Position numbers and translations under genes: made by a program
Assembly: GCA_003693705.1 (NCBI GenBank)
Contig: RBZT01000684.1
Coordinates: forward strand, 115,485-179,484
Length of the DNA stretch: 64,000 nt
Origin: Polymyxa betae A26-41
Taxonomy: Eukaryota > Protista > Endomyxa: Phytomyxea
Direction: 5' to 3'
Part shown: positions 24,170 through 33,445 of the stretch, piece by piece
Layout: every line of letters starts with the position of its first letter
Numbering within the stretch: position 1 is the stretch's first letter
The notes under the pieces: generated by a model
The model's database searches: none
Seen by the model: only the letters and a program-made list of their open reading frames with translations
What the model was told of the DNA's origin: nothing

Positions 24170-25128
24170 TTAATCAGCTGTCTCCGAATCGGCGTGCAAG
24201 ACGATATACTGCCGGGAGCTCTGCCCGAACTTCAAGCAATCTTTCTCGAGAAGCTCATAAAACCTGGCCGACTCGATTCGTTCATCGTTCAAAAAGGTGC
24301 CATTTGTGCTACCGAGATCGATAACATACGGGCAGACACGTTGGGTCAGGTCGCCGACCACATTTCGTGTCGTCTTCTTCCTGAACTGAATTGCAGCGTG
24401 CTGCTTCGAGCAGGACGGGTGCTCGACAGGGATATCGGCGACGTGACGTTCACGTCCGAGACGATAGCACGATTTTCGATGCAGATGCAAGGTGTCAACG
24501 ACGGCGCCGTCCTTGAACACGTAGAGACGCCAGAAGCGATCGGAGAGAGCGGCGTCGTGAGGTTCATGATACCTTTCAATGAATTATTGAGGTCGTTATA
24601 TGTCCTGATAATAACGTCTGCTTACTGAAGACGAACACCGCCATTTAGCTCGTGTCCATCACTATCTATAACATCTAGAAGGCCGGTCTGGTTTAGATTG
24701 AATTTCTCTTTCACAATATTCTTCTCCTCTTCTTCTTCTCTGCAGAACGTTTCAGCAAAACCGTAACATACTGAAACAAGGTTGCTTCATTCTACAAATA
24801 AAAATAACAAAATCAAAAACTTATCGAACTTCTCTTTGATTTCTTTTTCTGCAGCCACAGCCCTACGTCCGAATCTATCATCGTATGAGGCTTTTGATGT
24901 ACGATGTGGCGGCGAACGACGTCGTTGTGGCGCGGGCGATCGCCGACGCCGAGAAGACGGCGAGGGGCGTCGTTGAGGTGATGGCGATTGACGAGGTCGA
25001 GGAGACGGCGACCGGCGTCGTCTTGGAGGTGAGGCACGACGTCGGGGAGGCGACGGTGAGTGTCGAGCTCGTGGTGAAGATGACCGCCTTAGTCGGCGGC
25101 CATACTGATCTCGAGGATCTGATGACAT
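24170..25128 (-). CDS. SNIP1: FHA-domain splicing factor SNIP1/DAWDLE/Pml1
   Basis: RS/SP-rich N-terminus; WRLYVFK, LGRERHVADIPVEHPSCSKQHAAIQFR, YVIDLGSTNGTFLN, FGQSSRQY. Confidence 0.93.
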
Positions 25129-27382: not shown

Positions 27383-29626
27383 ATGATCTGCCTATTGTAC
27401 AAGGTCGGCAACGGTCGAGGACAATTCTGAGCTCAGATTGATCTCAGGACGTCTCGTAGGTTCAATATGAAGGCAAACCGACGCACCAATTAGTGGTTTC
27501 TGGTGGCATTCCCCAGTTTGGTGAATGGGACCTGTCCAGGGCCATCCCGCTTCGTCGATCGGAGCTGGATCGTGATGCGAATGTCTGGAGATGCGAAGTG
27601 AAAGCGCCCTCCATCAATTTCGAGTATGCCTTTGTTGAAGTCGCTATTACTCCTGGGCAGAAAGACATCTGGTACCCAAAGTGAGTTGTTTTAGTCCCTT
27701 TTTGCAGAATGTGCTTCTGAGGCATTATTAGACGCGAAGCCAAGCTATATGGAAAGTCAGAGGTGGATACAATTTTCCAGATTTTTATAGCTAAACTGTT
27801 TTTTTCTCCTTACTGGTTGTTTTGTCTTATTATTTTTGAAAAGTTCTAAATGCATCTTCATTTTGATTGTCAAACGCATGTTAAATTTCATCCAGACGGA
27901 GCCGGTTGTCTGTATCACCGATGATGGTTTTGGGGAATCTCCATCCTGCAAGATGCGATCATCCGGTTCAGGTTCGGATCCCGATATTCGAAGTAAGAGC
28001 GCCATGCAAAACGATTTCTTGGCGCTCTGCAATCGGTACGCTGCCGAGTTGGGTGTGACGTCGCCATCGATTCCGGTCTCGGTCCAGACGGGCATCGTCA
28101 ACGCCAACCACAAAGTTCGACTCCTTCGTCGATCCTGGCTGTCGCTTCGGAGCGACGTTAATCAACTTCTGGAAGGCGGCACCGACATGATGCCTCTCTA
28201 TAGTCTGCTCGACGCTGTGCAATCTGAGCAACGATCCCGGGAGCAACTGTTTGCAGCTTATGTGAAAGAAAATCGCGAACGTCGCGCCCTGATCGATCGA
28301 ATTCAGATGATGCGCGGCAAGATTCGCGTCCTGGTTCGAATACGACCTAAACTGGAATCGGAATCCGATCTGGATTGCGCTATCGACCAGATTGACGATA
28401 CAACATTGTGCGTTCGCGATAAAACGTTCACATTTGATGGTGTTCTGGGGCCTTTCTCGACACAGGCTGATGTGTTTGATGAAGTTGAAGATGTGGTGGC
28501 ATCCTGTATGGATGGCTTCACCTGTTCCGTCTTCAGTTACGGTATGTACCGGGCATTTTTTTAAGGCTTTTTTATTCTATTGCCACACTTTGAACATCGA
28601 TTCTTTCAATAATGGCTTGACATTTCCTCTATAGGCGCTACCAATAGCGGTAAGACGTACTCGATGGAAGGGCCCGAATATGATCGCGGCGTTAGTTTCC
28701 GCTCGATACGCAAGCTATTCGATTTGCGTGACCAACGCCAATCATCGTCAGAAGTGACGCTCCATCTCAGCGTCCTTGAGGTCTATAACGACGCCATTTA
28801 CGATCTTCTGGATCCGAACGAAGATCGGCCGACCTTGGAAGTGATGACAACCGCCAGCTCTGATGATCTTGGCCGAGTCAATAACCTGATCTGGCTCCCA
28901 GTCGAATCGACGGACGCAGCCTGGGCCAGCATTCAAAGGGCGACACGATCTCGCAGCGTCGGCGCTACTCGGAGCAACGAACGCAGCTCTCGATCACACC
29001 TGGTCGTGTCCGTCGCTGTTCATTCAGTCGATATTCGGTCTGGGACGAGGCTGATCGGGAAGCTTGCGCTGGTCGACTTGGCCGGAAGTGAACGTCTGCG
29101 TATGTCGGGTGCCGTTGGTGAGCGCCTACGCGAATCGCAAGCGATCAACAAATCGCTGAGTGCCTTGTCGAATGTGTTTCGAGCTCTCTCCGGCTCAGGC
29201 GACCAGCACGTTCCGTTCCGGGATAGCCGGTTGACGTTTCTGCTGCAAGATTATCTCAATATGAGCGCACGTGTGATTACGATCGTTCATGTGAGCCCGT
29301 GCTCTGGTGCCAGCGTTGACGAATCCATTTGTTCGTTACGATTCGCTGAGAGGGCAAAATTCATCGAACTTGGAGCGGCTTCGCGCCGAATTGAATCGTC
29401 AGAATACTTCAAGTATAAGACGACTCTTCAGGCCAAAGACAAGATGATCGAGAAGCTTCAGTTCGAAGTGGCCGCGTTGAGGAATCGTTTGGCACCAAAC
29501 GGCAGCATTCACAGCAGTTCCCCCTCCAGAAAATCTCCAGCGCCAGCCAGAACCCCCAACCATCTCAAGCACGCATCAAGGCTTCGATTTTCTGCCACGA
29601 ACGAAAATCTCCCCGCTAATAGATAG
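27383..29626 (+). CDS. CBM20-coiled coil-kinesin-14 motor fusion protein
   Basis: Exons 27383-27403, 27460-27680, 27732-27762, 27896-28541 and 28635-29626 splice in frame. CBM20 (VSGGIPQFGEWDLSRAIPL...W...FEY), kinesin-14 neck (RGKIRVLVRIRP), P-loop GATNSGKT, NERSSRSH, LVDLAGSE, HVPFRDSRLT. An alternative upstream start near 27168 is possible. Confidence 0.88.
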
Positions 29627-29686: not shown

Positions 29687-30885
29687 TTAAACAATGTATT
29701 TATGATAAAAGCTCTCAAAGATATCGTATGACAATGTGGCAATACCGAAGAGAGGTCCAACAACGAGACCCCGGGCTGATGCCCCTTTGAAGAACGCCCT
29801 GGGACCCTCTTGTTTCAGAACAGTACTGAATGCATTCATGACGCCCGAATACTGGACACCGCCGGACGATTTACTCTGCAGGCGGGTCTTGATTACATCG
29901 CATGGTGTCACAAACACGGCACTAAGACATTGTCAGTGGTATTATGCATGATGTTAGAAGCTACACAGACCTGATAATACCAGAGAATGTGCCTATAGCA
30001 ATGGTGGTAGATGCAGGCAGGGAACCATCACTATCAGAGAGGGTCTCCTTCAGTTTACAGTTCAGAGTGAAGAACAGAACTGAGAATGGAACATCACGGA
30101 GCAATGTGGCAGCATTGCCTTTATACATCTGGCTCAGGCCAAGCTCGGTAATCAGCTACAGCATTCGCTTAGGGTCTAGGGTTTTAGGGTTTGACACCAC
30201 CGATTTCACCTTGACTGTGCTTGTACCAGGTCCAGCCATCTGTGCCCGGATCTTAACGATCTCCATCGGTGTCGTTATAGTACATTGTGCAAATCCAGTC
30301 AGAGCACCTGCCGCCAGCTCGCTCGGTAGCGTCACGACGCCGGCACCGTCGGCCAGCATCTCCCGGAACTGAGCATTGCAGGCAAGTTTCAGGGCCTTCT
30401 CGGGCATGACACCGACTTCATCATATCAGTGAGGAAGACATCGGTATAACCATATCAGGGGGGCGTACCGAGATTCGGGAACAGACCACGATAAGCACCA
30501 CGAAAGCCATCACGACCGATTGACGATGTTAAGCAGTGAAGGACACCTCGATATTGAATAGGCGAGGATGAAGTCTGATTCTGAAGTCGCGTCTTGGCAA
30601 GATCAAGTGGAAATATCACTAAAAACGGAATGTCTCAGCAACCGCAAATAAACGAGATGGGAGATTGTCAAATAGAAATGGTTGTTAGGCGAAAGACGCA
30701 ATAAACGATGGAATGAGAATAAGAAATATTACAGGATTAGAAGCATGATATTGAATACCTGCAGTACCAACGAATCCTCCAATGGCTCCAGAGACCAGCT
30801 TCACCGAGAAGGGCGTCGTTACCTTGGTCTGGTCTAATGCATTATTCGGCGTCTGCACGACTGGATGAGGTATACGAGATGACAT
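29687..30885 (-). CDS. Mitochondrial carrier (SLC25, glutamate/aspartate-carrier-like)
   Basis: Three signature repeats PLDLAKTRLQ, PMEIVKIRAQ, PCDVIKTRLQ; PEKALKL; LRDVPFS. Confidence 0.92.
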
Positions 30886-32161: not shown

Positions 32162-33445
32162 TTACAACGCCCCTATAGTATTGGGATCTTGAGCCATCAG
32201 CTTGAGAATCACATCTTCAGACATTCCATACTTGAATATAGCAGGTTCTGATATATAACGTCTCTGTTGGTTACGATCATCATCTGATAGAGTTCGTAAC
32301 TGGGTCTGTAGGTCGCAGAACTCCTTGTTCGTAGCCAGATCATCATAGGCCGTCCGATCCAGGTCCAGCTGGGACAGGACGCGGGCCAGGACGTCCTCGG
32401 ACGTCGCCTCGTCAACGTCCATGAAACGGAATGCAGGATTCTGACGGAACCAGGTCAGCTGGCGGCGAGCGAGCTGTCGTGATGCAGTCTGGAAGTCGTC
32501 CAGGAATCGGCGGAACCCGGCCAGGTCGAACTGAAAGAGCTAGGGTTTAGGGGTTTTAGGGTTTACGCAGGGTTTTGTAATGTTACCTTGCCCTGGAATG
32601 TGTCCAGGTATGCCAACGCCTGCCTATATCCCACAGATAGTGCAGGTGGTGATCCAGGTGGCAGTTTCCCGGCACCGTACAGGCCCACGACTTCATCGAG
32701 CAGTCCGCGTTGTAACATATGCTCACATCGTCGATCGATATCACGATACAGAGATGGACGTGATCGGACGAGAGTCACGATACGGAAATCGATATCCGAT
32801 GGGGGCGTGGCGGCCGTCGTGCTGCATTCCGTGGCCGCATGACGGACCCGATACACAGTACGTACGAGACGGCGCTGGTTGCCGTACTGGACCTGCAGTA
32901 GCGGCCCCGGATCGATGGAGAGACGTTGCGCTATCCAATTGATAGCTTCCGTCCAGTTGTATGTTGCTAGAGCGTACTGGACCATATTGGTAGTGACAGA
33001 ATCAGGACGTTGTTTGGCACCATGATACTGATCATGTCCATCTATGAGAAATGAGAGATACATTCCAGATCCACCACATATGATAGGAAGATTGCCACGT
33101 TCTGATATAGAGCGTATAGCATGATGGGCATCACGAGAGAAATCGGCAGCAGTATATGGATGTGTAGGAGATAGTTCTGGATCAGCAATATCAATAAGAT
33201 GATGTTGAACAGATCTCTGCCATAGACGTGATGGTTTAGCAGATCCAATATTCAGTCCTCTATATACAGCTACGGAATCTGCTGATATGATCTCTGCAGG
33301 ACGTATTCCTGCTATACGCATAGATAGACTGGACTTCCCAACACCAGTACATCCTAATACACACACACACAGGGGATCAGGTCCGCGAATCGGGGTCGTA
33401 CTGGATCTCCCTACCGGCCAGGATCAGACATCGAATAGGAGCCAT
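32162..33445 (-). CDS. tRNA dimethylallyltransferase (MiaA/IPT9-like tRNA isopentenyltransferase)
   Basis: Spliced N-terminus MAPIRCLILAGCTGVGKS; IISADSVAVYRGLNIGSAKP, HHLIDI, GGSGMYL, IDRRCEHML, VGYRQ, RQLARRQLTWFR. Confidence 0.92.

What the first reader, a model, noticed from the sequence alone, without database searches (positions are those of the whole stretch)
27383..29626. Starch/glycogen-binding CBM20 domain fused to a kinesin-14 motor
Seen in sequence: three small exons upstream of the kinesin ORF splice through canonical GT-AG introns (27404-27459, 27681-27731, 27763-27895) in frame into it. They give MICLLYKVQYEGKPTHQLVVSGGIPQFGEWDLSRAIPL...VWRCEV...FEYAFV...WYPKRE...CITDDGFG, then a coiled coil and a C-terminal motor with a kinesin-14 neck. 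Established: G..P.LG.W....A..L / W / FEY is the CBM20 signature, the DDG.FG ending recalls GPCPD1-type CBM20, and C-terminal kinesin-14s are minus-end directed. Inference: a motor whose cargo-binding tail grips alpha-glucan directly, which would be a microtubule-based system for positioning glycogen/starch-like granules. I know of no described CBM20-kinesin. The ORF track splits the two domains, so automated annotation could miss the fusion.
Basis: partly seen in the sequence, partly recalled or inferred. Interest (0 to 1): 0.9.

Follow-up and report, generated by a model that had tools for sequence, protein, structure and literature searches.

The report
Kinesin motor with worn starch-binding domain
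A root parasite of sugar beet and its relatives carry a real gene that joins a starch-binding-type domain to a microtubule motor, but the parasites appear to make no starch or glycogen and the domain has lost a key sugar-gripping residue, so it probably holds some other cargo; the red-algal version, with an intact site, is the better candidate for a motor that grips glycogen.

Summary
The fusion is real. The genome matches the Polymyxa betae draft. Two other proteins carry the same chain, P0122 (colinear across all three CBM20 junctions) and Plasmodiophora brassicae PBRA_005211, whose first exon encodes CBM20 through the motor start with no intron. The architecture is not undescribed: a 2010 kinesin survey lists Cyanidioschyzon CMT097C as PLAT-CBM_20-KISc, and Galdieria has it too. 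I found no functional study. Yet the domain is 53-56% conserved between genera, so it is used. Best reading: a cargo or partner adaptor on a kinesin-14B, like plant malectin kinesins; ligand unknown. Neck residues that set direction are also changed, so minus-end travel is unproven. RNA check unavailable. No earlier scan note of this fusion was found.

The parts
27383..27403 (+). Exon 1 (aa 1-7), first beta strand of the CBM20 domain
   Evidence: 5 of 7 residues identical to P0122
27404..27459 (+). Intron 1, 56 nt, GT..AG, phase 0
   Evidence: gap-free alignment across it to P0122
27460..27680 (+). Exon 2 (aa 8-80), core of CBM20
   Evidence: Pfam PF00686 32.7 bits, E 6.6e-8; only CBM20 match in the genome
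27526..27528 (+). W30, equivalent of site-1 W543 (A. niger numbering), kept
27586..27588 (+). W50, equivalent of W563, kept
27628..27630 (+). A64, equivalent of site-1 K578; alanine in all three plasmodiophorid-type proteins, lysine in 82 of 96 other CBM20 domains
27670..27672 (+). W78, probable equivalent of site-1 W590 (register from MAFFT; the HMM alignment places it differently); following E and N not kept
27681..27731 (+). Intron 2, 51 nt, GT..AG, phase 2, begins with an in-frame stop
27732..27762 (+). Exon 3 (aa 81-91)
27763..27895 (+). Intron 3, 133 nt, GT..AG, phase 0, 29% GC
27896..28541 (+). Exon 4 (aa 92-306): last CBM20 strand, linker, helical stalk, neck, start of motor
28280..28330 (+). 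Kinesin-14 neck (aa 220-236) with D at the usual N of LHN and GK for GN
28542..28634 (+).
28635..29626 (+). Exon 5 (aa 307-636 and stop): rest of motor with P-loop GATNSGKT, switch I NERSSRSH (28976-28999), switch II DLAGSER (29075-29095), then tail
   Evidence: Pfam Kinesin E 1.5e-71; motifs
29387..29497 (+). Post-motor coiled-coil helix (aa 558-594), followed by a low-confidence basic tail

Best explanation
A single spliced gene encodes a cytosolic kinesin-14B (KIFC3/KCH/MDKIN branch) with an N-terminal CBM20-fold domain. Shown: gene structure, both domains, conservation in three genera-level lineages, intact ATPase motifs, no membrane anchor. Inferred: the stalk dimerises the motor; the motor binds and moves on or slides microtubules; the CBM20 domain acts as the cargo or partner adaptor. 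In plasmodiophorids it probably no longer grips alpha-glucan with useful affinity, and binds a protein or other non-starch partner through a surface conserved only in this group (the two or three exposed tryptophans plus the basic LxGK..EPVVCxTDD end). Most likely job, by analogy with plant malectin-domain kinesin-14: nuclear division or cleavage of the plasmodium.
For: Fusion. Fold: AlphaFold model of the P0122 domain pLDDT 87, best matches all CBM20s, Z 13.5, rmsd 2.4 over 99 residues. Under selection: domain 53-56% identical between genera against 19-30% for the stalk and 66-76% for the motor. Against glucan cargo: no match in the genome for PF00343, PF05693, PF08323, PF06202, PF00128 while GT20, GT48, GH31 controls hit; P. 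brassicae list has no GT3, GT5, GT35, GH77 (PMC4815078 Table S6); K578 is alanine, site-2 Y527/Y556 absent; these residues are the binding ones (PMC9069913) and a natural lysine-less CBM20 added little affinity (PMC9920598). 14B placement 100/100. MDKIN2 precedent at spindle and phragmoplast (PMC7094084).
Against: The site-1 tryptophans are kept in all three proteins, and the lysine-less StDPE2 domain still raised binding capacity about threefold, so weak glucan or malto-oligosaccharide binding is possible, more so in a dimer. The genome is a draft (about 91% of core genes) searched exon by exon; P. brassicae has two GH13 genes while my GH13 search here was blank, so blanks can be false. No partner protein, localisation or expression data were obtained; the mitotic role rests on analogy only.
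Confidence: 0.55

Rival explanations
1. The domain still binds a soluble or non-starch carbohydrate (malto-oligosaccharides from host starch, trehalose-related sugars, or a beta-glucan made by the parasite's GT48), so that sugar is either cargo or a switch for the motor.
For: W30, W50, W78 kept; genome has GT48, three GT20 and two GH31 loci; P. brassicae has putative maltose/oligosaccharide transporters.
Against: Loss of the lysine and of E591/N595 removes the polar contacts to glucose; no CBM20 with beta-glucan specificity was found among structural matches; beta-glucan stores are usually in vacuoles (own knowledge).
Confidence: 0.2
2. One reading: the motor grips the parasite's own glycogen- or starch-like granules and positions them along microtubules.
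For: True CBM20 fold with site-1 tryptophans; same architecture with an intact W/K/W/E/N site in Galdieria.
Against: No detectable pathway to make or mobilise such granules in P. betae or P. brassicae; K578 lost.
Confidence: 0.1
3. The domain engages host starch grains, which plasmodia engulf.
For: P. brassicae plasmodia surround and internalise starch grains (PMC10953367).
Against: The grains lie outside the parasite membrane or in phagosomes; the protein has no hydrophobic segment (max Kyte-Doolittle 1.1-1.2) and a motor must be cytosolic.
Confidence: 0.05
4. The domain is a relic with only a structural or autoinhibitory role (folding back on the motor or capping the stalk).
For: Binding residues eroded; motor on a long branch (1.8 changes per site) with unusual neck and P-loop.
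Against: Conservation of the domain far exceeds the stalk's and includes surface aromatics; no evidence of a domain-motor contact (full model pTM 0.56, uninformative on this).
Confidence: 0.1

Closest known systems
Cyanidioschyzon merolae CMT097C and Galdieria yellowstonensis KAK4528664.1 (PLAT-CBM20-kinesin-14B)
   Same: CBM20 upstream of a coiled stalk and a 14B motor with a post-motor coiled coil. Catalogued only; no functional paper found.
   Different: About twice as long, extra PLAT domain, much longer coiled coils, canonical neck and P-loop, intact site 1 (W, K, W, E, N). Common origin with the plasmodiophorid gene is possible but not shown: 98/88 in one tree, not recovered in six variants.
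Plasmodiophora brassicae PBRA_005211 (CEO96602.1, A0A0G4IN55) and UniParc UPI0006B2AF92
   Same: Orthologues: same architecture, same K-to-A change, same neck and P-loop variants, shared intron, clade 100/100, shared neighbouring genes with P. brassicae.
   Different: P. brassicae lacks the three CBM20 introns. Named only 'kinesin-like protein' or hypothetical. The organism of the UniParc entry is not given; Spongospora subterranea transcriptome is my inference.
Plant malectin-domain kinesins MDKIN1/2 (KIN14Q/R)
   Same: Kinesin-14 with an N-terminal carbohydrate-module fold of unproven ligand, internal motor, post-motor coiled coil; act in cell division (PMC7094084).
   Different: Malectin fold, not CBM20; about 1100-1200 aa; orthology not established (near in some trees; separate).
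Non-catalytic or scaffold CBM20 proteins (STBD1, laforin, GPCPD1)
   Same: Same fold, Z 11.9-12.6; CBM20 used as a targeting module.
   Different: They link to membranes or enzymes, not to a motor; STBD1 and laforin bind glycogen in cells that make it.

Membership tests
CBM20 | Pfam PF00686 above gathering score | tested here: met
   32.7 bits on exon 2; 37.5 P0122; 30.4 P0147; cut-off 23.3
CBM20 | About 100-residue beta-sandwich fold | tested here: met
   orthologue model pLDDT 87; Z 13.5 to glucoamylase CBM20
CBM20 (functional starch binder) | Site 1 tryptophans W543 and W590 | tested here: met
   W30 certain, W78 by MAFFT register
CBM20 (functional starch binder) | Site 1 lysine K578 | tested here: not met
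   alanine in all three; lysine in 82 of 96 others
CBM20 (functional starch binder) | Site 2 aromatics Y527, Y556 (W563) | tested here: not met
   only W563 kept; site 2 is variable in the family
CBM20 (functional starch binder) | Measured binding to starch, glycogen or cyclodextrin | not testable with these tools
   needs protein
Kinesin superfamily, active motor | P-loop GxxxxGKT, switch I NxxSSRSH, switch II DLAGSE | tested here: met
   all present; P-loop variant A/N for usual Q/G (3 vs 209)
Kinesin-14 | Neck N-terminal to the motor; motor groups with kinesin-14 | tested here: met
   PF16796 hit; inside the KIFC3/KCH (14B) side, 100/100 against 14A; only kinesin-14 rows were in that tree, and all best database hits were kinesin-14
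Kinesin-14 | Canonical neck residues (N of LHN, GN) | tested here: not met
   D/D/G and GK; N in 158 of 176 and GN in 171 of 176 fetched sequences
Kinesin-14 | Minus-end-directed motility | not testable with these tools
   Ncd N340K moves both ways (PMC2922096), so the neck change matters
Red-algal PLAT-CBM20-kinesin-14B | N-terminal PLAT domain | tested here: not met
   no PLAT in P0122, P0147 or the exons
Red-algal PLAT-CBM20-kinesin-14B | One clade by motor sequence | tested here: inconclusive
   98/88; not
MDKIN (KIN14Q/R) | Malectin domain PF11721 | tested here: not met
   versus 46

The most novel reading that the evidence does not exclude
There is an old, unstudied group of kinesin-14B motors that carry alpha-glucan-binding modules (CBM20 in Cyanidioschyzon, Galdieria and plasmodiophorids; a CBM48-type module in the unidentified eukaryote of contig L008) and attach directly to a polysaccharide, with no protein or membrane adaptor. 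The red-algal form would move or position cytosolic glycogen/floridean starch; the parasite form would be a derived version with a changed sugar ligand, and possibly changed direction.
Probability: 0.3. Interest if true: 0.85.

Novelty: new variant of a known kind. Interest (0 to 1): 0.6.

Why it matters
How storage glucan particles are placed or shared out in cells is little understood, and no motor that binds glucan directly turned up in my searches. This locus points to a small set of proteins where that can be tested at once: the Cyanidioschyzon/Galdieria protein (intact site; C. merolae has only five kinesins, and is transformable, own knowledge) beside the plasmodiophorid one (site eroded, pathway absent, domain still conserved). 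The pair is a natural experiment in how a sugar-binding module is reused. For plasmodiophorid biology it marks a group-specific motor with an unusual neck, shared by parasites of beet and brassicas.

Tried and rejected
The spliced model was searched exon by exon by reference; the joined protein was never sent to a search tool and was used only inside scripts for alignment and trees; tool-returned orthologues stood in for it in full-length searches and folds. Led nowhere: exon-5 homologue search, limited to 575 aa; region search with the P0122 N-terminus found only itself; Atlas searches gave leads below 0.8; metagenome scan gave only distant kinesins, 23-38%; P0071 and P0152 contigs show no carbohydrate module among called genes; CBM21 search uninformative; three papers not held. 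A single origin with red algae looked strong but failed robustness checks. The paper library lacks most subscription journals, so a functional study may have been missed.

Full report
Source. The window lies in an assembly of 27,085,814 bases in 1,001 contigs, matching the Polymyxa betae draft (1,001 contigs, 27,085,946 bp; PMC6328671), a plasmodiophorid root parasite (Rhizaria).

Observation. A fourth intron, 28542-28634, splits the P-loop; with it the five exons give an open frame of 636 residues. Searched exon by exon, exon 2 scores above the Pfam cut-off for CBM_20 (32.7 bits, E 6.6e-8) and exons 4 and 5 give the kinesin motor and the kinesin-14-type Microtub_bd model. It is the only CBM20 match in the genome. 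The joined protein was not sent to any search tool. RNA could not be checked.

The fusion is independently supported. A phmmer search with exon 2 alone against 1.84 billion representatives returned, as best single-domain hit, P0122 (688 aa, 56% identical), one chain with CBM_20 and Kinesin (UniParc UPI0006B2AF92, organism not given; its Met-less leader suggests a transcript-derived model, and Spongospora is my guess). It aligns to the model without gaps at all three CBM20 junctions. A search with its motor gave Plasmodiophora brassicae PBRA_005211 (632 aa) with the same domains. In that genome residues 1-293, from CBM20 through stalk and neck into the motor, are one uninterrupted exon, the next-but-one intron sits at the position of P. 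betae intron 4, and several neighbouring genes have their counterparts in this window. AlphaFold folds the P0122 domain at pLDDT 87; the top structural matches are all CBM20s (Z 13.5, rmsd 2.4, 99 residues). The full model shows beta-sandwich, helical stalk running into the motor, a post-motor helix and a disordered tail.

Is it described? In part. The 2010 kinesin survey lists Cyanidioschyzon merolae CMT097C as Kinesin-14B with PLAT-CBM_20-KISc in a supplementary table (PMC2867816), without comment in the text; an earlier survey noted only its LH2 domain (PMC1434745). Galdieria yellowstonensis KAK4528664.1 has the same three domains. Six text searches found no functional work and no mention for plasmodiophorids.

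Does it grip alpha-glucan? First, the cargo seems absent: no match in the genome for glycogen phosphorylase, GT3 or GT5 synthases, GH13 or debranching enzyme, whereas trehalose-phosphate synthases, a beta-1,3-glucan synthase and GH31 enzymes are found by the same method. The published P. brassicae list has no GT3, GT5, GT35 or GH77, though it has two GH13 and one GH15 (PMC4815078 Table S6). Limits: draft genome, exon-wise search. Second, the site is eroded. Site 1 of CBM20 is W543, K578, W590 and site 2 Y527, Y556, W563 (PMC9069913, PMC9920598). The three plasmodiophorid-type domains keep the tryptophans but have alanine for K578, which is lysine in 82 of 96 other domains, and lack E591, N595 and the site-2 tyrosines. 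A natural lysine-less CBM20 gave little gain in affinity, though more binding capacity. Galdieria keeps W, K, W, E, N, and these algae store cytosolic alpha-glucan (own knowledge). Host starch is engulfed by P. brassicae (PMC10953367) but lies across a membrane, and the protein has no hydrophobic segment. The domain is not decaying, however: 53-56% identity between genera against 19-30% in the stalk.

Motor. P-loop, switch I and switch II are intact, so ATPase activity is likely. The neck is odd: the asparagine of LHN (158 of 176 fetched kinesin-14s) is D or G, GN (171 of 176) is GK only in these proteins, and the P-loop reads GATNSGKT. A change at the first position makes Ncd bidirectional (PMC2922096), so direction must be measured. 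The motor falls on the 14B (KIFC3/KCH/MDKIN) side at 100/100. In the careful mixture-model tree it grouped with Galdieria and P0150 at 98/88, and the contig of P0150 carries a CBM48-type glycogen-recognition module just upstream across a 10-N assembly gap (28 bits, cut-off 26.8). That clade was not recovered by FastTree or in six variants; the plasmodiophorid branch is long. One origin is therefore possible, not shown. Rows left out: partial motors under 250 residues, P0149 as a duplicate of P0269, and seven long rows in two variants.

Mechanism. Shown: one gene, CBM20 fold, stalk, intact 14B motor, conservation. Inferred: a dimeric cytosolic motor whose CBM20 is a cargo or partner adaptor, probably for a non-glucan ligand (0.55), working in nuclear division or plasmodial cleavage by analogy with plant MDKIN2, another kinesin-14 with a carbohydrate-module fold of unknown ligand found at spindle and phragmoplast (PMC7094084). 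Rivals: soluble or non-starch sugar ligand (0.2), own alpha-glucan granules (0.1), structural relic (0.1), host starch (0.05).

Verdict. Real, conserved, rare and unstudied; architecture already catalogued once in a red alga; new here are its presence in Rhizaria without PLAT, the coupled loss of the binding lysine and of the glucan pathway, the altered neck, and a likely CBM48 counterpart. New variant of a known kind; interest 0.6.

Noticed in passing
L008:3-482 (JGI 3300017104, Ga0186639_101103): AMPK1_CBM (CBM48-type) module 5' of a 10-N gap, upstream of a kinesin-14B ORF (P0150) on the same strand; probably one CBM48-kinesin chain in an unidentified eukaryote.
   Followed up: partly
L009:3001-6811 (Galdieria yellowstonensis KAK4528664.1): PLAT-CBM20-kinesin-14B with fully intact starch-binding site 1; best candidate for a glucan-gripping motor.
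   Followed up: partly
G000 whole genome: No detectable glycogen/starch synthase, phosphorylase, GH13 or debranching enzyme; one GT48 beta-1,3-glucan synthase at C739:16556-19189.
   Followed up: partly
L023:1474-1827 (G000:C667): Second, weak AMPK1_CBM-like module (24 bits, below cut-off) besides the AMPK-beta-like one on C941.
   Followed up: no
window 29687-30885 (minus strand): Mitochondrial carrier gene converging tail to tail with the kinesin, about 60 bp from its stop.
   Followed up: no
window 32563-33366 (minus strand): tRNA isopentenyltransferase-like gene (IPPT, E 3.7e-43).
   Followed up: no
window 24170-25128 (minus strand): FHA-domain gene with an Arg/Ser/Pro-rich N-terminus, SNIP1-like.
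   Followed up: no
L002:10001-12068: P. brassicae orthologue lacks the three CBM20-region introns of P. betae but has an extra intron at codon 293.
   Followed up: yes
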